From IMG/VR virus record IMGVR_UViG_3300033995_001164, positions 62,001-126,000 of that record: a stretch of DNA of 64,000 nt, one strand, 5' to 3'. Position numbers and translations under genes: made by a program. The notes under the pieces are model-generated. The model was given only the letters and a program-made list of their open reading frames with translations, was not told the origin of the DNA and did no database searches. Below are positions 10,783 to 26,723 of this stretch, one piece after another (position 1 is the first letter of the stretch; each line of letters starts with the position of its first letter).

Positions 10783-13101
10783 CTAACAAGAACCTATAAC
10801 ATTCATTATTTCGGTACTACTAACAATACTTCTTGCACATACATTATATGTACATATAGTGCTTAAGCAATACTCTGTGTCTGTTTGTTGAACTCCATCA
10901 CAATCTATATATGTTATTTCAAAAAACTCGTCATAAGGTGCACTTTGATAACTTGAACATACAGGTATCGTACTTGTCGGTACATAAATAAAATCATTTG
11001 TTTGAACTTGTCTTGAGATTCCAATAACAGAACTACAATTATCCCCAATAATTGTTGGTGTTGATATCACTGAAGAAACTTGAGTTATAATATTTGTCGT
11101 ACAGTTTGATTGAGATGCAACTTGCCCATCAGTAATTGTGTCCACAGTCGTTGAATTTATTTGTATTATATCTCCATTGGTTATTGTTATTGAATTACTA
11201 TATTGAATTGAAGTAATAATTTGGGTATTTGGAGAACAAAACGGCCTTGTCCCTTGAGATACCGGAGTTGTTGGACCAACGGTTGTGGTTATAGGTAATC
11301 CATTTTTGGTCACATTAAATACCACAGATGAATTACCACTACCCGGACCGTTTACCGTTATTAATGCGGTAGATATTAAATTAAAAGTCACACTAACACC
11401 AACCGGTAAAGGTGGATTAGATACTAAAGTCATCAATTGAGTAACTGTTTGAGAAACATTTGGAACTGAAGTTGTTGTTGCAACACCAACATTCGCCAAT
11501 GACAATTGATAAGTTACAGGTATCGAATCATACCCAATTGTCACTGTAGTTGTTTGTGAATTATTTTCTGAATCATAAACAACTACGGTATATGTGTTTG
11601 GACATAAATTGGTAAAAGTATTATTTGAATTAGATGTTATCCCTCCATTAATACTATATGAATAAGGTGAAGTTCCATTCTGAGCAAATATTGATATACT
11701 ACCATTACAATTTATGGTTCCTTGACAAGAACTGTTTGTTTTACTAACACTAACTTGTAATGGAATTACCGGAGGACATCCCCCTTTACTCATTGTTATG
11801 GAATATTGTTCATCCCCTCCTAATACGACCCAAGCAGAATCAGGTATTACATCAACAGTAGTGCTAATAACTACACCACCGCCCAAGGTTAATGGATTGT
11901 TTGTACCAATAATGTAGATTTCCCATCTATTATTATTAATACTCCAAACAATATCGTACCCAACGCTTGACCATTTAAATCGACCATTTTGAGTTCCATT
12001 ACAAACAAATTGTATTGGACCGAAATTTGGAACGCCAGTTCCAATTGCTATTAAACATAAATCAACACATTGAACTGGTGATGTTGGAGTCGGTGATGGT
12101 GTCATTGTTGGAGTTAATGAAGGAATTGGTCCGAGTAATTCACAAATTGTTGTTGCGGTATAATCAGGACTACCGTCAGGCCAATCATAATCTGTAACGA
12201 CAACTTCATAAGTACCAGCCGGAACCCCAAATAAAGTTTGACTTCGTTGACCTCCTTCCCAAAAGAAAGAATATGGTGCCGTACCACCTGTAACATTTAT
12301 TGATAAAATCCCCCCTAACGGATTGCTATTTGTTGGCGATTGTATTATATTACAACTAATACCCATATCAAATAAAGTGATAACGTCACATTCATTCTTC
12401 AATCTTATTACCGGAGTATTTGATGGCGTTGGGGTAGAGGTATTAGTTGGTGTTGGTGTTACAGTATTTGTCGTCGTAATTGTTGGTGTTACAGTATTTG
12501 TTGGTGTAATTGTTGGAGTTGGGGTTGGGGTCGGGGTTGAACAAATGACCGTTGTTCTCGTATTTAATTTCGTTACTCCTCCAAATGGTTTAGTATAATT
12601 AAACGATACTTCAAGACCAATTTGGATTCCTTGAACAAAGATACCACAACAATCCGTATAATAATACGTTCCCGTTGTTATCCCTAACCCGCAAATAATT
12701 GGGGGACTTGAAGGTGTTTGCGTGTTTGTTGGTGTATTAGTTGGTGTTGGTGTATTAGTTGGTGTTTGTGTGTTTGTTGTCGTATTAGTTGGTGTTTGTG
12801 TCGAGGTATTAGTTGGTGTCGGAGTTACCCCAATAGAGCAAGGGTTTGTCATCTCCACAGTACTATTTGTGGTAAAAGACGCTGAATTATTTTTGTAATA
12901 AAAAATTACAGGAGTTTGTACATCACTAACACATATACTATTTGGGTAATACCCACTATCAGTATATGGGTCATCCTGATTAATATCAACACAATCAAAA
13001 TAATTAACAAATACAACTCCATTAAGTAATGGGTCAGAATTGCCCGTCGCGTCTGCCAAATCAATAGCACTTATCGTTATGTCATAAAAACTACAAGCCA
13101 T
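10783..13101 (-). CDS. Cys-rich virion protein with Thr-Pro linkers and two SprB-like repeats
   Basis: PTPTNT tracts; GGILSINVTGGTAPYSFFW...GTYEVVVTD and CNGSISIFAQNGTSPYSYSI...YTVVVYD; N-terminus paralogous to 13422-15890. Confidence 0.65.
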   Translation of the reverse strand: MACSFYDITISAIDLADATGNSDPLLNGVVFVNYFDCVDINQDDPYTDSGYYPNSICVSDVQTPVIFYYKNNSASFTTNSTVEMTNPCSIGVTPTPTNTSTQTPTNTTTNTQTPTNTPTPTNTPTNTQTPSSPPIICGLGITTGTYYYTDCCGIFVQGIQIGLEVSFNYTKPFGGVTKLNTRTTVICSTPTPTPTPTITPTNTVTPTITTTNTVTPTPTNTSTPTPSNTPVIRLKNECDVITLFDMGISCNIIQSPTNSNPLGGILSINVTGGTAPYSFFWEGGQRSQTLFGVPAGTYEVVVTDYDWPDGSPDYTATTICELLGPIPSLTPTMTPSPTPTSPVQCVDLCLIAIGTGVPNFGPIQFVCNGTQNGRFKWSSVGYDIVWSINNNRWEIYIIGTNNPLTLGGGVVISTTVDVIPDSAWVVLGGDEQYSITMSKGGCPPVIPLQVSVSKTNSSCQGTINCNGSISIFAQNGTSPYSYSINGGITSNSNNTFTNLCPNTYTVVVYDSENNSQTTTVTIGYDSIPVTYQLSLANVGVATTTSVPNVSQTVTQLMTLVSNPPLPVGVSVTFNLISTALITVNGPGSGNSSVVFNVTKNGLPITTTVGPTTPVSQGTRPFCSPNTQIITSIQYSNSITITNGDIIQINSTTVDTITDGQVASQSNCTTNIITQVSSVISTPTIIGDNCSSVIGISRQVQTNDFIYVPTSTIPVCSSYQSAPYDEFFEITYIDCDGVQQTDTEYCLSTICTYNVCARSIVSSTEIMNVIGSC

Positions 13102-13203
13102 TATATTTTATTCATTTTATTCATCTTATTTTATAATTATAACTTTATTTTTTTTTTATGATAATATAATAACCCAAGTATAGTATTATTACTACTAATT
13201 GAC

Positions 13204-13422
13204 TTATATTACACTTTCAATTCCGCTTATTGTACAGTTATTTGCATCCACCACCTTCAACATATAAGATGATGATGTATCATATGGTGATGGTATATTA
13301 AACACATACGGCGTTGTGGTTATTGTTGTCACATAGAAACAACCACTCCCATTACTTTGACATATGTAAAGGTTATAGGGTGATTGTCCTGTTATACTAT
13401 TAATTGTTACTTGTATTGCCAT
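13204..13422 (-). CDS. small Cys-containing virion protein (single beta-sandwich-like module)
   Basis: 72 aa; GQSPYNLYIC...YMLKVVDANNC resembles the SprB-type end motif; coupled to the upstream gene. Confidence 0.6.
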   Translation of the reverse strand: MAIQVTINSITGQSPYNLYICQSNGSGCFYVTTITTTPYVFNIPSPYDTSSSYMLKVVDANNCTISGIESVI

Positions 13423-15890
13423 TATTTATTTTTTCTTCTTTTTTTCTTAGATGTGATAAATTCATAAACCATAAGTGAGAATTTATTACCAAAATAATGT
13501 ATTACTTTTCCAAGTTTATTATCCTCAGGTAATACACCCATCATATATGCCATGTGTTCAGACCAAGGTTTTGTTATTAAATAGAAATATTTCGAATATT
13601 GTGGGTTCTTAGTTAAGAAATTAACCACGGGTTTAGCCCAAGTCAAATATCCAAACATTCCTTTTTTATTTGTTTTTAACATCAATCTACCAAACTTCTC
13701 ATCCGCTTCCCAAATTTCTTTAGGTAAGTATCCTTGGTGATATAACAAATCACATATGATTTTTTGTTGTGTACCTCCTCCCGGACCAGGGTCTATTGGA
13801 CCAACATAAAAACAGGTACTACAATCAGGATATATGGTAGTATCAGATACACCAATTGAACTTGCAAAATAATCTCCGGTTTGAACAATAGGGACAAAAT
13901 TACCCGGAATAGTATAAGTTTCAGGTACTTCCCCTAAATATGTAAAACAATTCCCAAAAATCTCAGGGCTTTTAATTACCTGCCCAATTGTTGTTATTCC
14001 AGGGTGTTGTACTGTTTGAACTACTTGAGTCTTATAAACATTTCCTGAAATAACATAACAACTTTCATATAAAAACTTATTAGTTGAAGGTATAATAACC
14101 GGAACTCCACAAGAGGTACAGTCACTAAATTTAGTCGTTATTGAACTAAAATTATCCCCTTGGAATGTAATTGAAATTACATTTGTAGGTGGAATATATC
14201 CTGTATTATATCTACCAAGATAAGTCCAACAAGAACCAAGAATATCTTTAATTGTTTCACCAACAATTAATGAACCGTGAGGTAATGTTTGTATTACCAT
14301 TGAATTCTGTGTTTGGAAAAATACCGGTTGACAAGTTTGAAATACATATACCCAATTTGGTGTTGGTGTTGGGGTTTTTGTTGGTGTTGACGTTATTGTT
14401 GGAGTAGGGGGAGGTGTCGTACCAAAAGTTGAGCTAGGGGTGGGTGTTTGAGTAGGGGTGGGAGTATTTGTAGGTGTTTGAGTATTAGTATTTGTTGGGG
14501 TTGGAGTTGGAGTTGGTAATATTGAACAATTACTACAATTACCATAAACATTGTAAATATCTCCAACAGTAGTATTTGATGAGTAGTCGAAATCATCTCT
14601 AATATATGTTATACATTTTTGTTCTCCGTTCACCATCGCCAACATTGTAGTACCTACACTAATTGGGAGTCCCATATAAACTAAACTATCTGAGGTATAT
14701 ACCTCAACCCCTGTTTCACAAATGATTAATACCTTAACGGACACACAACTGAAGACACTTTCTAACATATTAAAAGTTACTTGACCTCCAACAGGAATGT
14801 TAGGTGTCGGCATGACAGTAGGTGTAACTGTCACAGTAGGACTTACCGGAGTATACCCACTTAAACTAAACGATACTGCGGTACCTAAACAAGGATTACT
14901 TGTTGGTGTTGGAGTGTTAGTTGGAGTGTTAGTTGGAGTGTTAGTTGGAGTAATGGTTAATGTTGGTGTTGGTTCCCAACCACAATCAAAATAAGCTTCA
15001 AAATCAAATGTCGTACAATCGATTGGTAATGGAGTTGGAGGTGGGCACTCTCCTACATTGAAATCCGTTGCTGAAATGTCGGGACATATTGATTTACAGG
15101 GTGTCGCACCTTGTAAAATACAATCGCCACCTAAACTATCACTTAAACACCAATATATTCCTGTGTAATAAATAAATGATGTTGTAATTGAATCTCCCGA
15201 GTAATATTGTTTATCATTATAGTATCCCGTCTCAGTATAATTTCCACTGTAACCCGTTAAAGCGGGTAATGTTGTGTTAAAACAATATATACTATTAGGA
15301 CAAGGTAAATCGGGTGTTGTTGGACAAGCAATATCCTCACAACCTGAAGAAACTTGTACAAAACTAACTCCCGTCCCATTATATATTGGACCCGAACCAT
15401 CATAAGTTATAACAGTTGCACATTCATTAAATAAAGTATCTGTAATTAAATAAGTGGTACCAATAACAAGAATTGAGGGTAAATCGACAAACCTAAATTT
15501 AATTAACGGATTACTACAACTTTGAAATTGAACAATATTACCACTTGTTGGGGTTGGAGTATTTGTTGGGGTTGGAGTATTTGTTGGTGTAGTCGTTGTG
15601 GTTGGTGTGGGTGTCACTTCAATGTCACAAGGACCTTGTATGTCCGTAGTACTATTCGTTGCAATTAAACCTAAATTATCTTTATAATAATAAATTACCG
15701 GAGTTTGAACATCACTAGCACATATACTATTTAAATAAACCCCCGCCTCGGAATATGAACCATTCTGATTAATATTATCACAATTAAAATAATCAACAAA
15801 TACAACACCATTAAGTAATGGGTCGGAATTTCCTGTCGCGTCCGCTAAATCAAGGGCACCTATCGTTATGTCATAAAAATTACAAGCCAT
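13422..15890 (-). CDS. Cys-rich Thr-Pro-linker virion protein with a C-terminal KIIC.. (CFI-box-CTERM-like) domain and basic tail
   Basis: Several PTPT tracts and many CxxC; ends GGGTQQKIICDLLYHQG...GYLTWAKPVV...KKKRRKNK. Confidence 0.6.
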   Translation of the reverse strand: MACNFYDITIGALDLADATGNSDPLLNGVVFVDYFNCDNINQNGSYSEAGVYLNSICASDVQTPVIYYYKDNLGLIATNSTTDIQGPCDIEVTPTPTTTTTPTNTPTPTNTPTPTSGNIVQFQSCSNPLIKFRFVDLPSILVIGTTYLITDTLFNECATVITYDGSGPIYNGTGVSFVQVSSGCEDIACPTTPDLPCPNSIYCFNTTLPALTGYSGNYTETGYYNDKQYYSGDSITTSFIYYTGIYWCLSDSLGGDCILQGATPCKSICPDISATDFNVGECPPPTPLPIDCTTFDFEAYFDCGWEPTPTLTITPTNTPTNTPTNTPTPTSNPCLGTAVSFSLSGYTPVSPTVTVTPTVMPTPNIPVGGQVTFNMLESVFSCVSVKVLIICETGVEVYTSDSLVYMGLPISVGTTMLAMVNGEQKCITYIRDDFDYSSNTTVGDIYNVYGNCSNCSILPTPTPTPTNTNTQTPTNTPTPTQTPTPSSTFGTTPPPTPTITSTPTKTPTPTPNWVYVFQTCQPVFFQTQNSMVIQTLPHGSLIVGETIKDILGSCWTYLGRYNTGYIPPTNVISITFQGDNFSSITTKFSDCTSCGVPVIIPSTNKFLYESCYVISGNVYKTQVVQTVQHPGITTIGQVIKSPEIFGNCFTYLGEVPETYTIPGNFVPIVQTGDYFASSIGVSDTTIYPDCSTCFYVGPIDPGPGGGTQQKIICDLLYHQGYLPKEIWEADEKFGRLMLKTNKKGMFGYLTWAKPVVNFLTKNPQYSKYFYLITKPWSEHMAYMMGVLPEDNKLGKVIHYFGNKFSLMVYEFITSKKKRRKNK

Positions 15891-15905
15891 TCAAATTTGT
15901 TTTAC

Positions 15906-15991
15906 TATAAATAACCCAATAGTGAGTTTTATACAAAAGAAATATAGTTTTATTGAAAAACAAATAAAGACAGGGTTAGGGAATATTTATA
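15906..15991. promoter_or_regulatory. divergent pair of TATTTATA motifs
   Basis: Plus-strand TATAAATA at 15906-15913 (upstream of the minus gene at 15890) and TATTTATA at 15984-15991 (upstream of the plus gene at 15996). Confidence 0.6.
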
Positions 15992-15995
15992 TTAT

Positions 15996-16181: not shown

Positions 16182-16183
16182 GA

Positions 16184-16246: not shown

Positions 16247-16293
16247 CATTGATGTACTAACTTCACCCTTAAAATCTTTAAAAATTATATTGT

Positions 16294-17169
16294 TTACAAG
16301 GATTTTATTGCGTTAATGATTATATCTATATCAAACATCTCATTCAAATCGTTATAAGGAATGGTCCCCAAATCTTCAAACAACAAATGTTTAGCATAAT
16401 AATTATGTTCTAAATTTATTTCTCTTGTGGGAGCATTTGCAACAATATTTTGGTTATTTTCATATCCAAATATTTTTGGATTAGTTCCTACCCACATAAC
16501 TACAGATGAAAGTCCAAGAGCCTGAGCCATATGCATCGCACTTGAATCTATTAATAACCTTTTTTCAGATAAGGTTAAAAGAATTGCAATACTTCTAAAA
16601 GAATCTAACGCTTGTAAAGTATCCGGATAAGATAATTGGTCTTCTCGTTTAATATGAAGAATTGTGTATTTGTCTTTGAATTGACTAATAATTTCTTCAA
16701 CAACTGTTTGTGGAATATCTCGAGTCCAACTATATTGTAATGGTTGACCTACTCCACCGCCATTAGTTTGAATAGCGAAAATTGGTTTGTCCGTCTTATA
16801 AAAATTTTCAAAATATTGTCTTTCCGATTTTGAGATGAACAGTTCGGGTTGTTCTCCGTTATAAGTAATACCAAACATCTCACACCAAATTTCAATTAAG
16901 TGTTTGGATTCTGTAATGTAATCACTAGTATTGTAGGGGTCAGAAACAAACACCTTACAATCTTTATTCATTATGTATTTTTTATATATCCCGTTGGTTT
17001 GTGTATGATTTAACACTTTATTTACATTTGGATTTGCAATAAAAACATCCGGATATCCAGTAATAACAATAATATAGGCATTAGAGTATTGTTTTTTTAT
17101 TGCGCTTAAAACCGCTGTACTCATAATGGATTTTCCTAATCCACCATCGATAGTAAATATTATATTCAT
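16294..17169 (-). CDS. glycosyltransferase, GT9 (heptosyltransferase-like, GT-B fold)
   Basis: GGLGKSIMSTAVLSAIKKQYSNAYIIV N-terminal motif and LIDSSAMHMAQALGLSSVVMW C-terminal motif. Confidence 0.7.
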   Translation of the reverse strand: MNIIFTIDGGLGKSIMSTAVLSAIKKQYSNAYIIVITGYPDVFIANPNVNKVLNHTQTNGIYKKYIMNKDCKVFVSDPYNTSDYITESKHLIEIWCEMFGITYNGEQPELFISKSERQYFENFYKTDKPIFAIQTNGGGVGQPLQYSWTRDIPQTVVEEIISQFKDKYTILHIKREDQLSYPDTLQALDSFRSIAILLTLSEKRLLIDSSAMHMAQALGLSSVVMWVGTNPKIFGYENNQNIVANAPTREINLEHNYYAKHLLFEDLGTIPYNDLNEMFDIDIIINAIKSL

Positions 17170-17186
17170 TTCTTATTTTTTATTAA

Positions 17187-18008
17187 TTATACATAACCAA
17201 AATAGTTGTAAAACCATTGATAATGTCGTTTTATTCTTTCACAATTTTCATAACCTAAAATTTCATTAAAATCGTCCGGTTTTCTTTTAAATTCTGTTCG
17301 GAGTTTATGGTCCCCATATATTCCATGTACCACATCATTTTCGTGAGTAATTTGTTCAATAGTTTGAAAATTATGACCTTCATAGTAAGGTAATTCAATG
17401 TAATTGTAAAACTTTCTAAGTTCCTCTTCAGGATTATCCATTAAGTCTTCATAACGGATAAATAAGATATTAGAATCCAATCCTTGTTGGATTATATCTT
17501 GGAGTCGGTCAACAGAGATACCGACCGGTGCTCCTCCACCCCAAATATCAATCCTTTTATTTAAGGTTGTCCCTATAAGTTCGTTAGGGTTTTGAACATG
17601 GTTTTCTTTGGTTGGGTTTTTTCTAAAGTTTTTTTCCATTGAAGAGTAGATACTTCTAATGTCTCTCACCATACACACAATTTTTGGTCTTTCTTGGAAA
17701 AGATTTATTAATTGGTAATGTATTCCCCACCCTCGACTTTTATCTAAAACAAAAGGTTTGTCAGTTAATGGTTTAAAGAAACCTTGCATCCCATCACGAC
17801 AAAAATTAATAAACGCTTTATCCATTAAATCCGCATCTTGAGCTCTAATCTCTTGGGAATTGTTGTAATGATTTTTTGCTCCGAAAATTAATTCAATCAA
17901 CCCTGAAGTAGGAGTAACATAAAATTCCGGATTTTGACCAATTAGGTTTTGGAATAATGTTGAACCCGCTCGTGGGAGTGATGAATTAAAAAAAATTGTT
18001 TTACCCAT
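17187..18008 (-). CDS. PAPS-dependent sulfotransferase (start probably MGKTIFF at 18008)
   Basis: SSLPRAGSTLFQ (5'-PSB loop), DKSR, MVRDIRSIYSS (3'-PB) and FIRYEDLMDNP. Confidence 0.85.
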   Translation of the reverse strand: MGKTIFFNSSLPRAGSTLFQNLIGQNPEFYVTPTSGLIELIFGAKNHYNNSQEIRAQDADLMDKAFINFCRDGMQGFFKPLTDKPFVLDKSRGWGIHYQLINLFQERPKIVCMVRDIRSIYSSMEKNFRKNPTKENHVQNPNELIGTTLNKRIDIWGGGAPVGISVDRLQDIIQQGLDSNILFIRYEDLMDNPEEELRKFYNYIELPYYEGHNFQTIEQITHENDVVHGIYGDHKLRTEFKRKPDDFNEILGYENCERIKRHYQWFYNYFGYV

Positions 18009-18142
18009 TATCTTTTTGTTTAAAAATAAAAAGATAATGGATATTGTAAACAATTTTAAATAAATTAAGAATCAGTTTCTATTCTAATTAATATTAATTA
18101 ATACGTATGTTTTTTACACTCATAGTGATTACCATTTTATTA

Positions 18143-19670: not shown

Positions 19671-22600
19671 TTACAGTACTTCAACCCAACTATTATCCGG
19701 ACAGAAATAGAGTATATCATTTATCGCGTCGGTACAATAACCAATGATTCTAACATTATTACCGGATGCCGGTGGAGATGTTGAGCTAAACCCTCCCGCA
19801 GTTGTTGACACATATTGTATAGAACCTAAAGTCATACTAGTAAATGACGTTGTACTAAATTTAGCATAACCTCGTAGTAATATTCCATCAGCAACTGTAG
19901 TGCCTAAAGCAATACCTAATAATCCTGTCGACCCAGAAACAGTAGTTGCATTTGCTGCTGTCCAAATACCTCCTGAACTGTAATAATAAACCGAACCAGC
20001 AACTAATGTGCCAGAACCGAAGTAAATGACCTCTCCCGCACCACCATTAGTAGTTGGAACTGTAAATATTTTATTTTTATCAATATTAAGATTATTAACA
20101 AATGTTGTACAACTTCTGTTTGCCGTAAGATTATTACCTATAATATGACTATTATTAAATGATGAAGGGATTGTATTGCACATACCTCCAAGTATTGATG
20201 AATTTGTTGAATAAATGTTATTTTGAAATCCACCTCCGATAGTCGAATAGCAGGAAATTATATCAATTTTGTTACCATATCCACCCCCAATTGTTGACCC
20301 ATTACCAAAAGACCTGTTGATACTACCACCTCCAACAAATGATTGGCAACCGGAAGCGGTATTACATTTACCTCCACCAATTGTTGAGAAGTACCCTGTT
20401 GCACAGTTTCTAAATCCACCTCCAATTGTCGATAGTCTACCGGCATTACAACAAACAATTGCCCCTGATAATATACCTGTAGTTACATTAAATGTTCCAC
20501 CCGAAGTATTGTGTCCAATACCACCACCAATTGTTGCGCCTAATGAACAACATTCATTAGGCGTTGATTGAATTATATTTCTTTGTCCACCACCAATTTG
20601 TGAGAACCTTGCTCCCACACTATTACGACAACCACCGACAATAGTTGAGTAAACTCCTCGTGATGTGTTAAAACTACCTCCGCCAATAAAAGTATAACCA
20701 GCTGTTGCACAGTTTCTAAATCCACCTCCAATTGTCGATAGTTTACCGGCGTTACAACAATTAATTGACCCAGTTAAATCTCCCGTAGTCGCATCAAATG
20801 TTCCACCTGAAGTATTATGTCCAATACCTCCACCAATTGTCGCCCCTAATGAACAACATTCATTAGGCGTTGATTGAATTATATTTCTTTGTCCACCACC
20901 AATTTGTGAGAATTTAGCGTTTGTAATATTACAATATCCGCCTCCGATAAACGATGTTAACCCTAATGATGAGTTACATCGACCACCACCAATGAATGAA
21001 TTTTGTCCGGATGAAAGATTACAATAACCACCACCAATTGTTGATTGGTAACCTAATGATGAGTTACATTTACCTCCACCAATTGTTGAATAATACCCTG
21101 TTGTACCGTTTTCTCCACCACCACCAATTGTTGAGAAATCACCGAAAGTTTGATTACATCGTCCCCCACCAATGGTTGTGAAACCAATATTAGGGGTTGA
21201 AGTATTACAGTAACCTCCAGATATTGTATTACCACCAGTACTTGCTGCGACACTATTATAAACATTAGTATTAATAGTATTCCTATTCCCACCATTAATA
21301 ACATCACCTACTCTTGGGTAAGAGTAATTAAAATTTTGAGATGGAAAAATTCTGTTTGAATAACCACCACCGATAAATGATGTGGTACCTGATGATGAGT
21401 TACATCGACCACCACTGATTGTTGAGGTAGACCCTGAAACAAGATTATTAAAACCTCCTCCGATTGTTGAACAAAATCCGTTAGAAATATTTTGACGACC
21501 ACCACCAACGGTTGAATGAGTACAACAAGCCTTGTTATAAAACCCTCCACTAACTGTTGAACGGATACCATAAGCGGTGTTTTCCTGGCCACCCCCAACT
21601 GTCGAATAACAATTATTTGCAATATTATAATTACCTCCAGCAATTGTTGAATAAGTACCACAAGCAGTGTTACAAGAACCACCACCAATTGTTGAATAAT
21701 TATTTGAAGAAGTATTACCACAACCGCCACCGATAAACGATGTTAACCCTGATGATGAGTTACATTGACCACCACCAATGAATGAATTTTGTCCGGATGA
21801 AAGATTACAATAACCACCACCAATTGTTGATTGGTAACCTGATGATGAGTTACATTTACCTCCACCAATTGTTGAATAATTATTTGAAGAAGTATTATAC
21901 GAACCACCACCGATTGTAGAACTAAGTCCAGTAGCATCATTACTATATCCACCACTAATCGTAGAATTAAGATTTGACGCAATATTATTAAATCCCCCCC
22001 CAACTGTTGAATAAGTATTTGAAGCACAGTTTTGATAACCACCACCAATTGTTGACCAATTTCCAAGTGATGAATTACATCTTCCTCCACCAATTGTTGA
22101 CGCACATCCAATAGTATTATTGAAAACCCCACCAGCAATTGTTGAACCATCACCAGACGCACCATTTGTTACACCCCCACCAATTGTTGAATATGCAGTT
22201 GATACGGTATTATTTCGGCCACCTCCAATTGTTGAACAAGCTCCTGTTGCACAGTTTTGATAACCACCCCCAATTGTAGAATTAACCCCATAAGCAAGAT
22301 TAGAACTACCCCCACCAATTGTTGAGTAAGTACAAGAAGCGGTATTACCACGACCTCCACCAATTGTTGAAGTATAACCATACGCACAATTTGTTACACC
22401 CCCACCAATTGTTGAATAATTATTTGAAGAAGTATTATACGAGCCACCACCAATTGTTGACCAATTCCCAAGTGATGAGTTACATTGACCACCACCAATG
22501 AATGAATTTTGTCCGGATGAAAGATTACAATAACCACCACCAATTGTTGATTGGTAACCTGATGATGAGTTACATTTACCTCCACCAATTGTTGAATAAT

Positions 22601-24050
22601 TATTTGAAGAAGTATTATACGAACCACCACCGATTGTAGAACTAAGTCCAGTAGCATCATTACTATATCCACCACTAATCGTAGAATTAAGATTTGACGC
22701 AATATTATTAAATCCCCCCCCAACTGTTGAATAAGTATTTGAAGCACAGTTTTGATAACCACCACCAATTGTTGATTGGTAACCTGATGATGAGTTACAT
22801 TTACCTCCACCAATTGTTGAACAAGCTCCTGTTGCACAGTTTCTAAATCCACCCCCAATAGTTGATAATCTACCAGCATCACAACAAGTAATTACACCAG
22901 TTAAATTTCCAGTAGTAGTATTAAATGTTCCTCCATTAGTATTATGACCAATACCGCCACCAATTGTTACCCCTAAAGAGCAATAAGGATTTGTAGGGGA
23001 TTGAATTATGTTTCTTTGTCCTCCAGCAATAACTGAAAATCTTGAATTTGTTATGTTGCAACAACCAGCTCCAATTGTTGAATAAGTAGCAGAAGCGGTA
23101 TTATTTGTTCCCCCTCCAATTGTTGAAAAACCATCAGAAGTAAAATTACAAACACCACCTCCAACTGTTGAATTTGTTCCAGAAGCATAATTACATCTAC
23201 CACCACCTACTGTTGAATACGCACCAGTAGCATCATTGGAATAACCACCAGCAATTGTTGAACGACAACCAGAAGCAATATTTAATACACCACCACCAAT
23301 TGATGAATGGTTCGAAGTAGCGTTATTAGAACTACCACCTCCTATTGTTGCCTGACAACCAGAAGCAGTATTAAAAGAACCACCTCCAATTGTTGCATTA
23401 CTTCCACTTGCAGAATTGTTATTACCACCTGATATTGTTGAAATATATCCTGTTGCACAGTTTCTTAAACCACCACTTATCGTTGATAATTTTCCAGCAT
23501 TACAACAAGTAATTACTCCTGATAAAATACCTGTGGTCGCATTAAATGTTCCACCTGAAGTATTGTGTCCAATACCACCACCTATTGTCGTACCCAAAGA
23601 ACAACATTCATTTATTGGTGATTGAATTACGTTTCTATTACCACCACCAATAAATGACATTCTAGCGTTTGTTGTGTTTCCACTTCCACCTAAAGACGCA
23701 GAATAAGCACCTGACGCGATATTACTAACGCCACATCTAACTGATGAGTTAGTGCCAGTTCCTGATATAATAACCGCGGATGGACGGGTATCAGCACTAA
23801 CTTTCATAACTAAATCCGTATTTGTAATACCTGTATAATACCAATATTCTAATATTCCTGTATTAGAGGTTACATATCTACCTCCATTATATGTTGTTGT
23901 TCCGGTTATAATACCAACAGATAAACCAATATACCTATTTGCAATAATAATACTATTATTAGCTTCAGTGGTACTAGTCCACGGTCCGTATCGAGTGTCT
24001 AATGATTTAGGTGAAAATGTTTCTAAATTGTCATTAATTATAATTGCCAT
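19671..24050 (-). CDS. long tail fibre/adhesin with ~14-aa STIGGGxxN repeats (YadA-like beta-roll)
   Basis: Dozens of STIGGG..N repeats; N-terminal LDTRYGPW...RYIGLSVGI domain; C-terminal GLLGIAL..LLRGY..YFCPDNSW domain. Confidence 0.75.
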   Translation of the reverse strand: MAIIINDNLETFSPKSLDTRYGPWTSTTEANNSIIIANRYIGLSVGIITGTTTYNGGRYVTSNTGILEYWYYTGITNTDLVMKVSADTRPSAVIISGTGTNSSVRCGVSNIASGAYSASLGGSGNTTNARMSFIGGGNRNVIQSPINECCSLGTTIGGGIGHNTSGGTFNATTGILSGVITCCNAGKLSTISGGLRNCATGYISTISGGNNNSASGSNATIGGGSFNTASGCQATIGGGSSNNATSNHSSIGGGVLNIASGCRSTIAGGYSNDATGAYSTVGGGRCNYASGTNSTVGGGVCNFTSDGFSTIGGGTNNTASATYSTIGAGCCNITNSRFSVIAGGQRNIIQSPTNPYCSLGVTIGGGIGHNTNGGTFNTTTGNLTGVITCCDAGRLSTIGGGFRNCATGACSTIGGGKCNSSSGYQSTIGGGYQNCASNTYSTVGGGFNNIASNLNSTISGGYSNDATGLSSTIGGGSYNTSSNNYSTIGGGKCNSSSGYQSTIGGGYCNLSSGQNSFIGGGQCNSSLGNWSTIGGGSYNTSSNNYSTIGGGVTNCAYGYTSTIGGGRGNTASCTYSTIGGGSSNLAYGVNSTIGGGYQNCATGACSTIGGGRNNTVSTAYSTIGGGVTNGASGDGSTIAGGVFNNTIGCASTIGGGRCNSSLGNWSTIGGGYQNCASNTYSTVGGGFNNIASNLNSTISGGYSNDATGLSSTIGGGSYNTSSNNYSTIGGGKCNSSSGYQSTIGGGYCNLSSGQNSFIGGGQCNSSSGLTSFIGGGCGNTSSNNYSTIGGGSCNTACGTYSTIAGGNYNIANNCYSTVGGGQENTAYGIRSTVSGGFYNKACCTHSTVGGGRQNISNGFCSTIGGGFNNLVSGSTSTISGGRCNSSSGTTSFIGGGYSNRIFPSQNFNYSYPRVGDVINGGNRNTINTNVYNSVAASTGGNTISGGYCNTSTPNIGFTTIGGGRCNQTFGDFSTIGGGGENGTTGYYSTIGGGKCNSSLGYQSTIGGGYCNLSSGQNSFIGGGRCNSSLGLTSFIGGGYCNITNAKFSQIGGGQRNIIQSTPNECCSLGATIGGGIGHNTSGGTFDATTGDLTGSINCCNAGKLSTIGGGFRNCATAGYTFIGGGSFNTSRGVYSTIVGGCRNSVGARFSQIGGGQRNIIQSTPNECCSLGATIGGGIGHNTSGGTFNVTTGILSGAIVCCNAGRLSTIGGGFRNCATGYFSTIGGGKCNTASGCQSFVGGGSINRSFGNGSTIGGGYGNKIDIISCYSTIGGGFQNNIYSTNSSILGGMCNTIPSSFNNSHIIGNNLTANRSCTTFVNNLNIDKNKIFTVPTTNGGAGEVIYFGSGTLVAGSVYYYSSGGIWTAANATTVSGSTGLLGIALGTTVADGILLRGYAKFSTTSFTSMTLGSIQYVSTTAGGFSSTSPPASGNNVRIIGYCTDAINDILYFCPDNSWVEVL
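21753..22055. repeat. 303-nt exact direct repeat, copy 1
   Basis: Identical by eye to 22473-22775 (offset 720 nt). Confidence 0.9.
22473..22775. repeat. 303-nt exact direct repeat, copy 2
   Basis: Identical by eye to 21753-22055. Confidence 0.9.
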
Positions 24051-24054
24051 ATTA

Positions 24055-25725
24055 TTATAAGTTTCTTAATTGCATTGATGTGTTAGTTGTTTGATAATTA
24101 CTAATATATATATCAAAATTTATTCCTGACCAATACCCATCAGGACTATTTACTGATTGTAAAACCGGTGATTGAAATAAATTTGTTAACCCCCCTATAT
24201 TCCCGTTATTTAACGCATCTACATACCATTTAGTTTTATCCGGGTAATTATCAAATGTTGCAAACCACAAATATTTCGAAACCGCAGCAAATGGTATTAT
24301 TATCGTTCCCGCAGCACTTAATAAAATTTTATTAGCACTCCCACTTGAAATAAGTGACGCAATACTTGAAGTTGTCGGTTGTGTTGTGGATACCCCCCAA
24401 AAAAATGGGTATATATTATTATAAGTAAATGTTGTACTATCGTAATTAGTTGATGCGGATTGTGGTGCATTAACACTTCTAACTTGTGAAGCTCTGACAT
24501 CAGTTGAGCCTTTATTATTTTGTTTAGCCAATCCAGTAAAATAATTACCATCAGATTTATATACAGTTAAGGTTGTTGTATTTAATCCTGTAGGCGCCGG
24601 TAGTGTATACACTTCAGAATAAGGTGTTGGACTTATAGTATATGATATATTTGGATTATTGGGGTCTGTATATCCGAATTGACTAGGTATATTAGTTGTA
24701 AACCCACTAGTTAAAGTTGTGTCAGTGAAAATCGGATTACCGTCTCTTAATAATCGTAATTGAGTGTATCGTCCTGCATCATTTTTAACACCTGTTGCCG
24801 TCAATGATAACGAGATAGTTGAACCCACCTCAGCAAGAGTATTAGAAACCCCCCCTATTGAAATTGTCGGTATTGTATATGTTGGTAGTACTGTTGGAAA
24901 TAATAAGTCATTAAATAAACTGACAAAAGTATTCCCACTTAAACTACTAACTGTGGTTCCGGAGGGAATTCCCCCTACATCAGTTGGCATCACTAATGTT
25001 GGTGATAATAAAGTATTATAGGTTGTATATAATATAGTTCCCTCACTAATACCTAACCCAGTATTTGCAGAAACACTTATCTCACCACTTGTAAATCCTG
25101 TAACAGGTACTGTTCCTCCCGTAACATTATATAATTCTAATGTTGAGGTTGCGGAAAAATAAGTCGCACCTGAGACTTGAGCTCCTCCCGCATAAAATAT
25201 TTTCCAACGAGCATCATTTCTTGACACACCATTGACATTTTCAATTGTTGATGCGGTCCAAGCATTGACAAACGCAGTTCCTTCCGTGGTATTACTTCTA
25301 ACAATAGTCGAATAATTTGATTCAGTTACTGTTACAGGTGTTTGTCCGCTAACCGCAGCCCATAAAGATTCATAATTCGGTATATTATATTGGTAAACAG
25401 TATTTGTTTCTTGAACAAACACTAACATACCAAGTCTTCTTCTTCCTGAGGAAATATTATCTGAGTTTAAAGTAATAAAATCAGGTGAGGATAAAGGGTT
25501 AGACCCTTTTGTGAAATTTATTGGAATTGTATTTGCAGATAATTGAATATTTGATGGATATGTCGATGCAGTTAATATTAAATTAAGGTCATTTAAATTG
25601 TAAACTTCCATATACCCCCCAGTACTTAATACTGAAAAATTTGTACCAAAAGTACTGGTTCTATCAGCACTTTGAGTACCGGATAATTGGGCTGAGGTTA
25701 AAGGGTTTTTATAAGGGAATGACAT
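24055..25725 (-). CDS. virion structural/fibre-associated protein
   Basis: T/S/G-rich; GGYMEV...RRRLGMLVFV motif; located in the tail module. Confidence 0.55.
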   Translation of the reverse strand: MSFPYKNPLTSAQLSGTQSADRTSTFGTNFSVLSTGGYMEVYNLNDLNLILTASTYPSNIQLSANTIPINFTKGSNPLSSPDFITLNSDNISSGRRRLGMLVFVQETNTVYQYNIPNYESLWAAVSGQTPVTVTESNYSTIVRSNTTEGTAFVNAWTASTIENVNGVSRNDARWKIFYAGGAQVSGATYFSATSTLELYNVTGGTVPVTGFTSGEISVSANTGLGISEGTILYTTYNTLLSPTLVMPTDVGGIPSGTTVSSLSGNTFVSLFNDLLFPTVLPTYTIPTISIGGVSNTLAEVGSTISLSLTATGVKNDAGRYTQLRLLRDGNPIFTDTTLTSGFTTNIPSQFGYTDPNNPNISYTISPTPYSEVYTLPAPTGLNTTTLTVYKSDGNYFTGLAKQNNKGSTDVRASQVRSVNAPQSASTNYDSTTFTYNNIYPFFWGVSTTQPTTSSIASLISSGSANKILLSAAGTIIIPFAAVSKYLWFATFDNYPDKTKWYVDALNNGNIGGLTNLFQSPVLQSVNSPDGYWSGINFDIYISNYQTTNTSMQLRNL

Positions 25726-25748
25726 ATTTTTATTTTATTATTTAATTA

Positions 25749-26723
25749 TTATGATTTAATATCCCCTTTAATCCATAGGGTATTTGTTAATGGTGGCGAC
25801 GATGGTTGTGAACATAATTCAATCATCCATAATATTCGATATACCCCTGAAGGAATAACACAACCTGACGGTACTATAACATTGACAGATGCATTTACCG
25901 CATCAGGAATTCCGTCATTAATTATCGAAGTTGAACAAGCACTTCCAATACCAACATCTAAAGTCATATTATTAAGAGCACCACCAACTCCATTAAGCGG
26001 AATCCAAACGGTATAGGTGTATTGTATTGACGAATTTATTTGTGATGGTAAAATTGGTACACTACCTAAAGTGTATTGATTTTGAGGACACCCGTATGAA
26101 TCAGTTCCACCTCCTGATGATTGCATAATAGTCCCCGAAAATGTGGATATATTTGTAACAAAATTACCCGATGAACCAGTCCATCCCGAATATTGTACGT
26201 ATAAAGCCATATCGTCAGCATAACTGGAACCTGCCGGTGTACCACTGTTACCCCACCCAAAGAATGCAGTTGCACCAGTATTGTACATGTATGACCCTAA
26301 ATCATTCAATGAAGTACTATCTTGTGGTTCAGGGAATATATAACCTAAAAACGCAGCCCCACTTGGTGTTGGTGTTTGAGTTGGAGTATTTGTTTGAGTT
26401 GGAGTATTTGTTTGAGTTGGAGTATTTGTCGGAGTATTTGTCGGAGTTTGAGTAGGGGTAGGAGTTTGAGTAGGGGTTTGAGTAGGAGTAGTTGTCGGAG
26501 TCACACATTGAAGCTCAATAACTACTCCAATTAACATTTCTTCTAATGTTACACCGGAATAATAAAGTATATCATTAACGTAAATGTCAAAAGGGCCTAA
26601 CGCCGGAGAATCCGGACTAACCTTAATAAGATAAGAAGAACATGAAGTTACTGCCAACGCTTGTACTATTTCATTATCACAACCGGACGCGGTATTAATT
26701 ACGGTAATTGAATATATGGCCAC
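25749..26723 (-). CDS. Thr-Pro-linker virion protein
   Basis: PTQTPT tract at ~26360-26500 between two Cys-containing domains. Confidence 0.6.
   Translation of the reverse strand: MAIYSITVINTASGCDNEIVQALAVTSCSSYLIKVSPDSPALGPFDIYVNDILYYSGVTLEEMLIGVVIELQCVTPTTTPTQTPTQTPTPTQTPTNTPTNTPTQTNTPTQTNTPTQTPTPSGAAFLGYIFPEPQDSTSLNDLGSYMYNTGATAFFGWGNSGTPAGSSYADDMALYVQYSGWTGSSGNFVTNISTFSGTIMQSSGGGTDSYGCPQNQYTLGSVPILPSQINSSIQYTYTVWIPLNGVGGALNNMTLDVGIGSACSTSIINDGIPDAVNASVNVIVPSGCVIPSGVYRILWMIELCSQPSSPPLTNTLWIKGDIKS

What the first reader, a model, noticed from the sequence alone, without database searches (positions are those of the whole stretch)
10783..26723. Candidate virion glyco-sulfation system: sulfotransferase + GT9 embedded among mucin-like Thr-Pro structural genes
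Seen: a sulfotransferase (17187-18008) and a GT9-like glycosyltransferase (16294-17169) sit in tandem, co-oriented, directly downstream of a protein with a ~150-aa Thr-Pro tract (18143-19660). Three more Thr-Pro-linker, Cys-rich genes lie nearby (10783, 13422, 25749). Established: Thr-Pro linkers are common O-glycosylation substrates, PAPS-dependent sulfotransferases sulfate glycans, and Bacteroidota bind and import sulfated glycans through SusC/D systems. Inference: the phage may decorate its own fibres with a sulfated glycan, for stiffening, protease resistance, or as bait/mimicry for a glycan-foraging host. Alternatives are modification of host LPS/surface (superinfection exclusion) or of DNA. 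No PAPS-synthesis gene is in the window.
Basis: partly seen in the sequence, partly recalled or inferred. Interest (0 to 1): 0.72.

Follow-up and report, generated by a model that had tools for sequence, protein, structure and literature searches.

The report
Phage fibre-linked sulfation and glycosylation cassette
A 309-kb uncultured jumbo phage has a sulfotransferase and a heptosyltransferase-like enzyme beside its tail-fibre genes, part of a cassette with its own activated-sulfate genes that is shared by many related phages and tracks a glycine-rich repeat fibre rather than the Thr-Pro proteins first suspected.

Summary
A sulfotransferase (ST, 17187-18008) and a GT9-fold enzyme (16294-17169) sit in tandem among four Thr-Pro-tract genes in a 309-kb jumbo-phage genome.

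The link to the Thr-Pro genes does not survive comparison. Among 26 non-redundant related loci, neighbours of the ST were:
- Gly-rich 15-residue-repeat fibre (window 19671-24050): 25
- GT9: 23
- APS-kinase-like gene: 19
- NMNAT-like nucleotidyltransferase (NT): 16
- any Thr-Pro-tract gene: 6

The usual cassette is fibre > ST > APSK > NT > GT9, often with extra glycosyltransferases and FkbM methyltransferases. In this genome APSK and NT lie about 45 kb away, so a PAPS-supply candidate exists outside the window.

Fibre-seeded searches find GT9 100-700 bp downstream of the fibre in 14 of 22 loci, sometimes without the ST.

APSK and NT are always paired (79/79) and occur fused in viruses, archaea and bacteria, which suggests a minimal PAPS synthase.

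Best reading: a phage pathway building a sulfated glycoconjugate, most likely on the adjacent fibre. The acceptor is inferred, not shown, and host-envelope modification remains a serious rival.

The closest precedent is the predicted sulfation genes in giant-virus fibril glycosylation clusters. I rate it a new variant of a known kind.

The parts
17187..18008 (-). PAPS-type sulfotransferase (ST), 273 aa
   Evidence: Pfam Sulfotransfer_3 scores 55.8 bits and Sulfotransfer_1 48 bits. The 'SSLPRxGS(T)' loop and the 'RDxR...S' segment are invariant in 23 homologues. The AF2 model has pLDDT 89.9. Closest solved and Swiss-Prot structures are TPST1/2 (TM about 0.56), followed by CurM-ST, NoeE, Stf3, NodH and HS3ST.
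16294..17169 (-). GT9-fold (GT-B) glycosyltransferase-like enzyme, 291 aa, divergent from canonical heptosyltransferases
   Evidence: The AF2 model has pLDDT 89.5. Foldseek matches are GT9 3tov, WaaF, WaaC, then TibC/Aah/BimC. The C-terminal 'LLIDSSxxHxAxALG' aligns to the donor motif of WaaC and WaaF. At the N-terminus an invariant 'GGLGK13' stands where WaaC and WaaF have 'xxxGD13'.
19671..24050 (-). Gly/Ser/Thr/Asn/Cys-rich fibre (FIB), 1459 aa, with at least 54 tandem 15-residue 'xSTIGGGxxNxSSGx' units. It is the conserved neighbour of the cassette.
   Evidence: Repeat analysis is. Relatives lie near the ST in 25 of 26 non-redundant loci. In FIB-seeded loci GT9 lies 100-700 bp downstream in 14 of 22.
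18143..19660 (-). 505-aa protein with a ~150-aa TPTNT/TPTQT tract, lying between FIB and ST. Lineage-specific and not a conserved partner.
   Evidence: Sequence and composition are. It hits phrog_24956, of unknown function. Its globular part weakly resembles DUF5977, BACON-like and tail-fibre models, TM about 0.5. Homologues occur only in near-identical genomes.
13422..15890 (-). 822-aa Cys-rich protein with three PT linkers
   Evidence: Beyond near-identical genomes, only its N-terminal ~90-aa module recurs.
10783..13101 (-). 772-aa Cys-rich protein with PT linkers. Its N-terminal module is paralogous to that of 13422-15890.
25749..26723 (-). 324-aa protein with one 50-aa PT tract
   Evidence: Weak relatives (28-32% identity) occur in 4 further loci.
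24055..25725 (-). 556-aa Ser/Thr-rich protein immediately upstream of FIB (fibre module)
   Evidence: Sequence is. Relatives at 54-57% identity lie near the ST in 6 further loci.
18002..18043 (.). 20-nt A/T-rich inverted repeat with a 2-nt spacer that encloses the ST start codon
   Evidence: Its function is unknown.

Best explanation
ST and the GT9-like enzyme are two parts of a four-gene phage cassette: ST, APS kinase, an NMNAT-like nucleotidyltransferase (NT), and GT9-like. The cassette belongs to the tail-fibre module of a large clade of uncultured aquatic jumbo phages. In this genome it is split: ST and GT9 lie in the window, while APSK and NT lie about 45 kb upstream at G000:32595-33466.

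Proposed mechanism:
1. The phage APS kinase makes PAPS. The APS comes either from the host or from the NT acting as a small sulfate adenylyltransferase.
2. The GT9-like GT-B enzyme transfers a sugar from a nucleotide sugar, possibly ADP-activated, onto an acceptor in the cytoplasm.
3. The ST sulfates the product.

The most likely acceptor is the adjacent Gly/Ser/Thr-rich 15-residue-repeat fibre, by analogy with autotransporter heptosyltransferases encoded next to their beta-helical adhesin substrates.

Shown here: enzyme families and folds, conserved motifs, and the synteny.
Inferred: that the four genes form one pathway, the NT's substrate, and above all the acceptor.
For: ST identity: family scores, conserved PAPS-binding-type motifs and fold.

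GT9 identity: GT9 fold with a conserved donor motif.

Pairing: ST and GT9 are paired in 73 of 80 loci in both gene orders. The cassette order is fibre > f8 > ST > APSK > NT > GT9, with two rearranged variants.

Non-redundant counts out of 26 loci: FIB 25, GT9 23, APSK 19, NT 16, PT 6.

APSK:
- Its profile hits only APS kinases in the PDB, with E down to 1.7e-19, and the P-loop, DGDxxR and SPY motifs are conserved.
- In locus L060 the same slot holds a canonical 223-bit APS kinase.
- The own-genome orthologues are 52% (APSK) and 89% (NT) identical to cassette copies.

APSK-NT coupling:
- The two are paired in 79 of 79 APSK-seeded loci.
- They are fused in both domain orders in 7 of 10 sampled long homologues, and one homologue is fused to a DHHA1 domain, the pAp-phosphatase family.

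Glycan context: relatives place multi-domain GT4/GT9/GT32-like plus FkbM-methyltransferase proteins and a GT25 inside the cassette. This genome has a second cluster with an FkbM methyltransferase, GT2s and a UDP-Glc/GDP-Man dehydrogenase.

Fibre link: independently seeded FIB loci have GT9 directly downstream in 14 of 22.

Against an LPS acceptor: the GT9 N-domain lacks the net positive charge of WaaC and WaaF (0 vs +8 and +5), and the G-D13 position holds an invariant Lys. No hydrophobic segments are seen.
Against: - No direct evidence that any virion protein is modified.
- Adjacency to fibre genes could simply reflect a variable late-gene region.
- The top structural matches of the GT9-like enzyme are LPS heptosyltransferases.
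- The invariant Lys at the canonical catalytic Asp position leaves its chemistry uncertain.
- The ST's nearest characterised relatives are protein-tyrosine sulfotransferases, not glycan sulfotransferases.
- The APSK-NT unit often lies more than 10 kb from any ST: only 9 of 46 APSK-seeded loci have an ST nearby. It also occurs as a fusion in the complete 56-kb Xylella phage Bacata, which has no recognisable sulfotransferase. The unit is therefore not exclusively an ST helper.
- The NT is closest to NMN adenylyltransferases and does not match the ATP-sulfurylase family above threshold.
- The GT9-fibre complex prediction gave no answer.
Confidence: 0.42

Rival explanations
1. Host-envelope modification. 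The cassette builds or alters a sulfated sugar on host LPS core, O-antigen or capsule during infection. The purpose would be to block superinfection, prevent progeny from re-adsorbing to lysed cells, or change interactions with grazers.
For: The GT9-like model is structurally closest to the LPS heptosyltransferases WaaF, WaaC, OpsX and WaaQ. JGI names the family 'ADP-heptose:LPS heptosyltransferase'. A GT25 ('LPS biosynthesis') and multi-GT proteins accompany the cassette in relatives. Sulfotransfer_3 includes glycolipid sulfotransferases such as NodH and NoeE (PMC11625862).
Against: The cassette sits inside the fibre module on the same strand and tracks the FIB fibre through three rearrangements. 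The GT9 N-domain is not basic, unlike WaaC and WaaF, and the G-D13 position holds Lys. No flippase, ligase or polymerase-type genes were seen in the loci examined, although this was not surveyed exhaustively.
Confidence: 0.25
2. The Thr-Pro tracts of the neighbouring structural proteins are the O-glycosylation and sulfation substrate, forming mucin-like decorated linkers.
For: In this genome, and in about a quarter of relatives, PT-tract proteins flank the cassette. In one sub-clade a PT-tract ORF directly follows the cassette (L058, L062, L067, L068, L073, L074, L077, L083). The other PT-ORF group in this genome lies about 8 kb from the second GT cluster.
Against: Only 6 of 26 non-redundant loci have any PT-tract ORF within about 10 kb, and a relaxed Ser/Thr/Pro criterion gives the same count. 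The PT proteins themselves are not conserved beyond near-identical genomes. PT linkers are common flexible spacers that need no modification.
Confidence: 0.1
3. Direct protein tyrosine sulfation. The ST works like a TPST or RaxST and sulfates Tyr residues of a fibre or secreted peptide, while GT9 acts independently.
For: TPST1/2 are the best sequence matches (E 1.9e-8) and the best structural matches (TM about 0.56). The fibre repeats often carry a Tyr just before 'STIGGG'.
Against: In the HMM alignment, the position of the TPST 'GEETR' acidic pair, whose second Glu I recall as the catalytic base (from memory), is occupied by an invariant 'TPTSG'. Only the N-terminal two thirds aligns. The tight ST-GT9 pairing and the surrounding sugar enzymes point to a glycan acceptor.
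Confidence: 0.08
4. The APSK-NT unit, and perhaps the ST, serves a nucleotide or small-molecule function unrelated to virion or envelope glycans. Examples are an NAD-type or 3'-phospho-adenylyl metabolite used in host takeover or counter-defence, or a DNA modification.
For: The NT is closest to NMN adenylyltransferases. The APSK-NT fusion exists in small siphoviruses without a sulfotransferase, next to a COG3236/GTP-cyclohydrolase-II-type gene in the early region. The unit is frequently far from any ST.
Against: The kinase domain is a genuine APS-kinase-family member with APS-binding-type motifs, scoring up to 231 bits in the fusions. The genome has no NadV. The unit sits inside the ST cassette in 19 of 26 loci. 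ST and GT9 remain paired and fibre-linked regardless. No precedent for DNA sulfation was found.
Confidence: 0.1

Closest known systems
Fibril-glycosylation gene clusters of Megavirinae giant viruses (Moumouvirus australiensis Ma457 SAT/APS kinase plus Ma461 sulfotransferase among GTs; also Cotonvirus) - PMC10117803
   Same: A virus-encoded cluster that combines glycosyltransferases, a roughly 260-aa sulfotransferase and the virus's own activated-sulfate enzyme, proposed to decorate virion surface fibres. In both cases sulfation is predicted, not demonstrated.
   Different: Those are eukaryotic giant viruses with a canonical 620-655-aa SAT/APS-kinase. This is a tailed phage with a minimal 148-aa APS kinase plus a 136-aa NMNAT-like NT, a GT9-fold enzyme, and linkage to a tail-fibre gene. 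Homology between the two sulfotransferases was not tested.
Autotransporter adhesin heptosyltransferases (TibC-TibA, Aah-AIDA-I; BAHT family)
   Same: A GT9-type catalytic core (TM 0.59-0.70). The enzyme gene lies directly beside a long repeat-built, Ser/Thr-rich beta-solenoid-type surface protein. The enzyme is a cytoplasmic protein glycosyltransferase.
   Different: The phage enzyme lacks the ~100-residue N-terminal extension of TibC and Aah; it aligns to their residues ~93-385. It has Lys at the canonical G-D position. The fibre repeat is 15 residues rather than 19. No activity is known, and there is no sulfation in BAHT systems.
Mycobacteriophage virion glycosylation (Freeman et al. 2023, cited in PMC12619734; the paper itself is not held in the library)
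   Same: Phage-encoded glycosyltransferases modify the phage's own structural proteins.
   Different: There the targets are the C-termini of capsid and tail-tube subunits. The GT families differ, and no sulfotransferase or PAPS genes are involved. That case is experimentally shown; this one is not.
Rhizobial Nod-factor sulfation (NodH or NoeE with NodPQ) and the analogous Xanthomonas RaxST-RaxPQ system (the latter from my own knowledge)
   Same: A Sulfotransfer_3-family enzyme is genetically coupled to dedicated PAPS-synthesis genes. NoeE and NodH are among the structural matches.
   Different: Those are bacterial, use canonical CysDN/CysC-type PAPS synthesis, and act on lipo-chitooligosaccharide or peptide acceptors.
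LPS core heptosyltransferases WaaC and WaaF (GT9)
   Same: Best structural matches, with a shared D-S/T-G-x-x-H donor motif.
   Different: Pfam GT9 scores below its cut-off. The N-domain cannot be aligned by sequence. Lys replaces Asp13, and the N-domain is neutral rather than basic.

Membership tests
PAPS-dependent sulfotransferase (Pfam Sulfotransfer_3 / Sulfotransfer_1) | Profile score above the curated cut-off | tested here: met
   55.8 bits vs 27, and 48 bits vs 22. The whole-genome scan finds this single copy.
PAPS-dependent sulfotransferase (Pfam Sulfotransfer_3 / Sulfotransfer_1) | 5'-phosphosulfate-binding loop (P-K/R-x-G-S/T-T) and 3'-phosphate-binding R-D-x-R...S segment | tested here: met
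   P12, R13, G15, S16, R115, D116, R118 and S123 are invariant in 23 homologues and align with TPST 'PRSGTT' and 'mvRDgRasvhSm'.
PAPS-dependent sulfotransferase (Pfam Sulfotransfer_3 / Sulfotransfer_1) | Sulfotransferase fold | tested here: met
   The model has pLDDT 89.9. The top 35 PDB matches with E<=1e-3 are all sulfotransferase-fold enzymes (sulfotransferases plus retinol dehydratase).
PAPS-dependent sulfotransferase (Pfam Sulfotransfer_3 / Sulfotransfer_1) | Sulfate transfer from PAPS to an acceptor | not testable with these tools
   Needs an enzyme assay.
Tyrosylprotein sulfotransferase (TPST) | Catalytic Glu in the 'GEETR' segment (Glu99 of TPST2; its role is from my own knowledge) | tested here: not met
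   In the HMM alignment that segment corresponds to an invariant 'TPTSG' (T32-G36) in the phage family.
Tyrosylprotein sulfotransferase (TPST) | Full-length similarity | tested here: not met
   Only residues ~2-210 of 273 align, with TM 0.5-0.57.
GT9 heptosyltransferase | Pfam PF01075 above the gathering score | tested here: not met
   14.1 bits vs 22. There is no sequence-level PDB match even at E<=10.
GT9 heptosyltransferase | GT-B fold closest to GT9 structures | tested here: met
   3tov E 2.5e-13 with TM 0.69; WaaF, WaaC and TibC follow. Swiss-Prot WaaF gives TM 0.67-0.71.
GT9 heptosyltransferase | C-terminal donor-binding D-(S/T)-G-x-x-H motif | tested here: met
   Invariant D208, S209 and H213 align to WaaC 'DTGLSH' and WaaF 'DSGLMH'.
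GT9 heptosyltransferase | N-terminal G-D catalytic aspartate (Asp13 of WaaC; its role is from my own knowledge) | tested here: not met
   The ungapped N-termini read WaaC '...SSMGD13', WaaF '...SWVGD13' and phage '...GGLGK13', with K13 invariant in 21 sequences. The secondary-structure register is the same. This was not checked by residue-level superposition.
GT9 heptosyltransferase | Basic acceptor (N-terminal) domain suited to anionic Kdo2-lipid A | tested here: not met
   Net charge of the N-half is 0, versus +8 (WaaC) and +5 (WaaF). This is a crude measure.
Autotransporter heptosyltransferase (BAHT: TibC/Aah) | N-terminal ~100-aa extension (TibC_1st / iron-finger region) | tested here: not met
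   The 291-aa phage protein aligns to residues ~93-385 of Aah and TibC. It gives no TibC_1st hit.
Autotransporter heptosyltransferase (BAHT: TibC/Aah) | Enzyme gene adjacent to a repeat-built surface-protein substrate gene | tested here: met
   GT9 lies 100-700 bp downstream of the FIB-type fibre in most of the 14/22 FIB-seeded loci that have it. This shows adjacency only, not a substrate relationship.
APS kinase (CysC, PF01583) - the gene at G000:33023-33466, outside the window | Profile score and conserved P-loop, D-G-D-x-x-R and S-P-Y motifs | tested here: met
   Pfam 61 bits vs 21.1. The family profile hits 24 APS kinases first, with E down to 1.7e-19. G7, Q8, G12, K13, T14, D33, G34, D35, R38, R51, N54 and P79 are invariant.
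APS kinase (CysC, PF01583) - the gene at G000:33023-33466, outside the window | Full-length equivalence to CysC (NCBIfam equivalog cut-offs; complete C-terminal lid) | tested here: not met
   59-62 bits vs cut-offs of 127-244. The match ends at profile position 131 of 152. It is a shortened form.
ATP sulfurylase (PF01747) - the NT at G000:32595-33002, outside the window | Family profile match | tested here: not met
   No hit in the genome. There are only sub-threshold hits (18-22 bits) in two relatives. The closest solved structures are NMN adenylyltransferases.
ATP sulfurylase (PF01747) - the NT at G000:32595-33002, outside the window | Functional coupling to APS kinase (as in bifunctional PAPS synthases) | tested here: met
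   Paired in 79 of 79 loci. Fused to APS_kinase domains in both orders. This shows association, not activity.
Virus-encoded virion glycan-decoration system | Modified virion protein demonstrated | not testable with these tools
   No cultured representative exists. Closest cultured ST homologues are 25-31% identical and lie in a different genomic context.

The most novel reading that the evidence does not exclude
This clade of jumbo phages makes its own PAPS with a previously unrecognised minimal PAPS synthase. That synthase would consist of a ~135-aa NMNAT-like nucleotidyltransferase acting as a third, analogous type of sulfate adenylyltransferase, plus a ~150-aa APS kinase. The phage would use the PAPS, together with a GT9-derived protein glycosyltransferase, to coat its repeat-built tail fibres with a sulfated sugar. 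This would be the first sulfated phage virion. The same NT-APSK unit occurs fused in archaea, bacteria and small cultured phages, so it would be a widespread overlooked route to activated sulfate.
Probability: 0.2. Interest if true: 0.85.

Novelty: new variant of a known kind. Interest (0 to 1): 0.62.

Why it matters
- Sulfated glycoconjugates are not known on phage particles. A phage pathway that supplies its own activated sulfate and is wired to the host-recognition fibre would add a new layer to phage-host recognition, particle stability and escape from recognition in aquatic systems.
- These families are very abundant: thousands of 90%-identity clusters.
- It would be a prokaryotic-virus counterpart of giant-virus fibril glycosylation.
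- Separately, the obligate and often fused APS-kinase/NMNAT-like pair is a concrete, cheaply testable candidate for a new kind of ATP sulfurylase. Testable copies exist in cultured Xylella, Xanthomonas and Stenotrophomonas phages.

Tried and rejected
Searches and tests that gave nothing usable:
- Megablast of the region against cultured phages found nothing.
- The GT profile against PDB sequences found nothing, even at E<=10.
- The sigma-70 promoter and terminator scans were no better than shuffled sequence, so no operon statement is made.
- The GT9 plus fibre-repeat complex prediction returned 'no answer' and is not used either way.
- ST and GT9 searches in three large records that hold the isolated APSK-NT unit found nothing, but those records are only 40-75% complete, so this is inconclusive.

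Readings considered and set aside:
- NAD-salvage role for the NT: there is no NadV and no second NMNAT-type gene, and the NT is always tied to an APS kinase. The reading is not excluded.
- Canonical PAPS genes: ATP sulfurylase and CysD/PAPS-reductase families are absent from the genome.
- A canonical ATP sulfurylase substituting for the NT in L060: not found. The neighbours there are DUF2061, a DnaJ-like protein and DUF2827.
- DNA modification: disfavoured by the fibre-module location and the sugar and methyl-transfer neighbours.

Other observations:
- Cellular ST homologues (42-51% identity in Verrucomicrobiota, Planctomycetota and Synechococcus) lack the cassette and sit in varied contexts, so they gave no acceptor clue.
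- The 'moraphage' paper (PMC12619734) describes aquatic Bacteroidota jumbo phages with core GTs but does not mention sulfotransferases. Whether this genome belongs to that lineage was not tested.

Full report
CONTEXT
The window is bases 62001-126000 of a 309,177-bp IMG/VR virus record with 31.6% GC, rated complete by CheckV. Nearly all large ORFs are on the minus strand. PHROG matches identify baseplate wedge proteins, ribonucleotide reductase, a helicase, a UvsX-like recombinase and an SSB in the window, so this is a T4-like-organised jumbo myovirus. No cultured phage matches at the DNA level.

CHECK OF THE OBSERVATION
- 17187-18008 is a sulfotransferase: Sulfotransfer_3 55.8 bits, Sulfotransfer_1 48 bits.
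- 16294-17169 reaches Pfam GT9 only below threshold. A confident AlphaFold model (pLDDT 89.5) has GT9 enzymes as all its best structural matches. Its C-terminal 'LLIDSSxxHxAxALG' aligns to the donor-binding motif of E. coli WaaC and WaaF, fetched from an annotated genome.
- The 505-aa protein upstream has a ~150-residue TPTNT/TPTQT tract, and three further PT-linker proteins lie nearby, two of them Cys-rich.
- Genome-wide, eight ORFs carry such tracts and four of them are here.

WHAT THE PAIR IS LINKED TO
The ST has 167 relatives in viral contigs, and I fetched 80 loci at 52-100% identity.
- ST and the GT9-like gene are co-oriented and close in 73 of 80 loci. Both gene orders occur, which argues for functional coupling rather than frozen synteny.
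- I clustered all ORFs of the 62 sequence-distinct loci and reduced them to 26 representatives (<90% ST identity, at least 9 kb on both sides). Neighbour counts out of 26 were: Gly-rich fibre family 25, GT9 23, a 150-aa kinase family 19, a 135-aa nucleotidyltransferase family 16, any Thr-Pro-tract ORF 6. A looser Ser/Thr/Pro criterion gives the same 6.
- The PT proteins' globular parts are found only in near-identical genomes.
- The typical arrangement is fibre > f8 > ST > kinase > (f5) NT > (f5) GT9. Two rearranged variants keep the same set.

THE KINASE AND THE NUCLEOTIDYLTRANSFERASE
- This genome encodes orthologues of both (52% and 89% identity to cassette copies) at G000:33023-33466 and 32595-33002, about 45 kb upstream of the window, abutting each other. 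The cassette is split here.
- The kinase scores 61 bits on Pfam APS_kinase (cut-off 21.1). It stays below NCBIfam equivalog cut-offs and lacks part of the C-terminal lid.
- A profile of 22 family members hits 24 APS kinases first in the PDB (E down to 1.7e-19). The P-loop, D-G-D-x-x-R, R/N and S-P-Y positions are invariant.
- In locus L060 the same slot next to the ST is filled by a canonical 226-aa APS kinase scoring 223 bits. This supports the functional assignment of the slot.
- The NT has the H-x-G-H and I-S-A-T-x-x-R nucleotidyltransferase signatures. It is closest to NadM-type NMN adenylyltransferases, though only over its first ~60 residues.
- The genome has no NadV and no other NMNAT-type gene, and no canonical ATP sulfurylase or CysD.
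- In 79 of 79 loci seeded with the kinase, the NT is its immediate neighbour.
- The nearest structural neighbours of a close NT-like cluster (the rank-1 hit; the Atlas holds no model of the query itself) in the ESM Atlas are single proteins combining APS_kinase and CTP_transf_like domains, from viruses, Methanobacteriota and Pseudomonadota.
- An exhaustive profile search found 4074 relatives. Of ten long ones scanned, seven are APS-kinase fusions in both domain orders (66-231 bits), and one is fused to a DHHA1 domain. DHHA1 belongs to the family that includes the pAp phosphatases of sulfate-activation pathways (PMC10322725, PMC8268124).
- All associations of this NT family therefore concern (P)APS metabolism. 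The simplest reading is a minimal two-part PAPS synthase in which the NT adenylylates sulfate. This is inference. No family-level match to ATP sulfurylase passes threshold, and I found no paper describing such an enzyme.

A CAVEAT ON THAT UNIT
- Only 9 of 46 kinase-seeded loci with adequate flanks have an ST within 10 kb.
- Cultured Xylella, Xanthomonas and Stenotrophomonas siphoviruses carry the fused form inside genes annotated 'kinase' or 'adenylylsulfate kinase'.
- In the complete 56-kb genome of Xylella phage Bacata the fusion lies in an early-gene region next to a COG3236/GTP-cyclohydrolase-II-type gene, and no Sulfotransfer_1 or Sulfotransfer_3 member is detectable.
- The unit therefore has, at least in some phages, a role that does not need a recognisable phage sulfotransferase.

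GLYCAN CONTEXT
- In relatives, the variable 'f6' genes inside or beside the cassette are multi-domain enzymes. One 1447-aa protein combines FkbM methyltransferase, a GT32-like DXD domain, GT4 and GT9 domains. A 712-aa protein combines GT4 and GT9. A GT25 recurs, and the long form of f5 carries DUF2061.
- This genome has a second cluster at about 174-181 kb with an FkbM methyltransferase, GT2 and GT92-like enzymes and a UDP-glucose/GDP-mannose dehydrogenase. It lies a few kb from the other group of PT-tract ORFs.
- These neighbours favour a sugar acceptor for the ST, even though its closest characterised relatives are tyrosylprotein sulfotransferases. In the alignment, the TPST 'GEETR' acidic segment corresponds to an invariant 'TPTSG' in the phage family.

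THE FIBRE
- The 1459-aa protein at 19671-24050 is 21% Gly, 14% Ser, 12% Thr, 11% Asn and 4.4% Cys. It contains at least 54 tandem 15-residue units of the form xSTIGGGxxNxSSGx. It has no Pfam match.
- I seeded a new search with this protein. Of 22 loci that are not near-identical to the window and have at least 5 kb downstream, 14 have a GT9 homologue, mostly 100-700 bp past the fibre's stop. Eight also have the ST, and six show fibre then GT9 without an ST.
- The GT9-fibre link thus looks primary, with sulfation as an addition.
- This resembles the adhesin heptosyltransferases TibC and Aah, which are encoded next to the repeat-built adhesins they glycosylate and which are among the structural matches.
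- The phage enzyme differs from both GT9 subgroups. It lacks the BAHT N-terminal extension. The ungapped N-terminus has an invariant Lys where WaaC and WaaF have the Gly-Asp13 aspartate. Its N-half is electrically neutral rather than basic. I recall Asp13 as the catalytic base from the literature, not from a tool.
- A complex prediction of GT9 with a fibre fragment gave no answer.

HOST AND DISTRIBUTION
- Both enzyme families are very abundant in metagenomes: 5070 and 3755 clusters at E<=1e-3.
- Cultured phages hold only distant homologues (25-35% identity) in Synechococcus and Pelagibacter phages. There the ST is not near fibre genes.
- Low-GC contigs with the full cassette are binned with Sediminibacterium, Flavobacteriaceae, Bacteroidetes and Bacteroides MAGs. 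High-GC cellular genomes hold lone ST homologues without the cassette.
- This is a weak hint of Bacteroidota hosts and nothing more.

COMPARISON WITH WHAT IS KNOWN
- The nearest described system is the fibril-glycosylation cluster of some Megavirinae giant viruses. It contains a SAT/APS-kinase and a sulfotransferase beside GTs, and its authors state that sulfation awaits validation (PMC10117803; also noted in PMC11625862).
- Phage virion glycosylation is established for mycobacteriophages (Freeman et al. 2023, as cited in PMC12619734).
- I found no paper on a phage sulfotransferase linked to fibres.
- The system is therefore a new variant of a known kind. Its possibly new element is the minimal NT-APS-kinase unit.

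VERDICT
- The glyco-sulfation idea is supported at pathway level.
- The Thr-Pro substrate idea is not supported.
- The acceptor (fibre or host envelope) remains open, with the fibre favoured by synteny.

Noticed in passing
Outside the window: G000:32595-33466 (locus L004:1010-1866, minus strand): An abutting APS-kinase-like gene (148 aa) and an NMNAT-like nucleotidyltransferase gene (136 aa). The pair is obligate (79 of 79 loci) and occurs as a single fused protein in viruses, archaea and bacteria, with one relative fused to DHHA1. It is a candidate minimal PAPS synthase.
   Followed up: yes
Locus L240 (Xylella phage Bacata LR743524.1, 29138-29878): Cultured 55-56-kb Xylella, Xanthomonas and Stenotrophomonas siphoviruses carry the APS-kinase/NT fusion in an early-gene region next to a COG3236/GTP-cyclohydrolase-II-type gene. 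Bacata has no detectable sulfotransferase. This implies an ST-independent role and offers a tractable experimental system.
   Followed up: partly
Outside the window: G000:174154-181775 (loci L117, L118): A second glycan-enzyme cluster: an FkbM methyltransferase, a GT2/GT92-like enzyme, a two-domain GT2, a UDP-Glc/GDP-Man dehydrogenase, PhoH and another GT2. It lies a few kb from the other PT-tract ORFs (G000:159880-166501) and from a 911-aa protein with a weak UspA1-repeat hit.
   Followed up: partly
window 19671-24050 versus locus L008: In one otherwise 100%-identical contig (L008) the repeat fibre is the only gene that differs: 83% identity in the best segment and about 720 bp shorter. Within the window copy, long blocks of repeats recur nearly verbatim. 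The fibre therefore appears to change repeat number quickly.
   Followed up: no
window 18002-18043: A 20-nt A/T-rich inverted repeat (90% complementary, 2-nt spacer) encloses the ATG of the sulfotransferase. A run of eight T follows about 10 nt downstream on the coding strand. It could be a translational or termination element.
   Followed up: partly
Locus L060:10767-11447: In one relative, the slot next to the ST holds a canonical full-length APS kinase (223 bits) followed by a DUF2061 membrane protein, a DnaJ-like protein and a DUF2827 protein, with no NT. DUF2061 (the long form of family f5) travels with the cassette in many loci, and a homologue of the f5 family lies at G000:224038-224235 in this genome (77% identity to a short-form f5; the DUF2061 domain was not checked there).
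   Followed up: partly
window 48180-50618: An 812-aa ORF with DnaB-like helicase matches at residues 559-798. Its middle part (~195-570) matches families labelled terminase large subunit, primase and helicase loader. It may be an inserted element (intein-like) or a fusion.
   Followed up: no
Outside the window: G000:172210-172926 (L118:2210-2926): A dUTPase N-terminal part is followed by HINT/intein-splicing-type matches, suggesting an intein-interrupted or truncated dUTPase.
   Followed up: no
window 33138-33977 and 52458-53189: Two paralogous endonuclease VII / HNH-type genes (phrog_1035) lie among structural and replication genes. They are probably homing endonucleases.
   Followed up: no
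window 56646-63986: A 2446-aa ORF that ends 14 bases before the window end. It was not examined.
   Followed up: no
Loci L087, L097, L098, L101, L109: Low-GC contigs carrying the phage-type cassette are deposited within MAGs labelled Sediminibacterium, Bacteroidetes, Flavobacteriaceae and Bacteroides. They are likely phage contigs binned with hosts, or mis-binned.
   Followed up: partly
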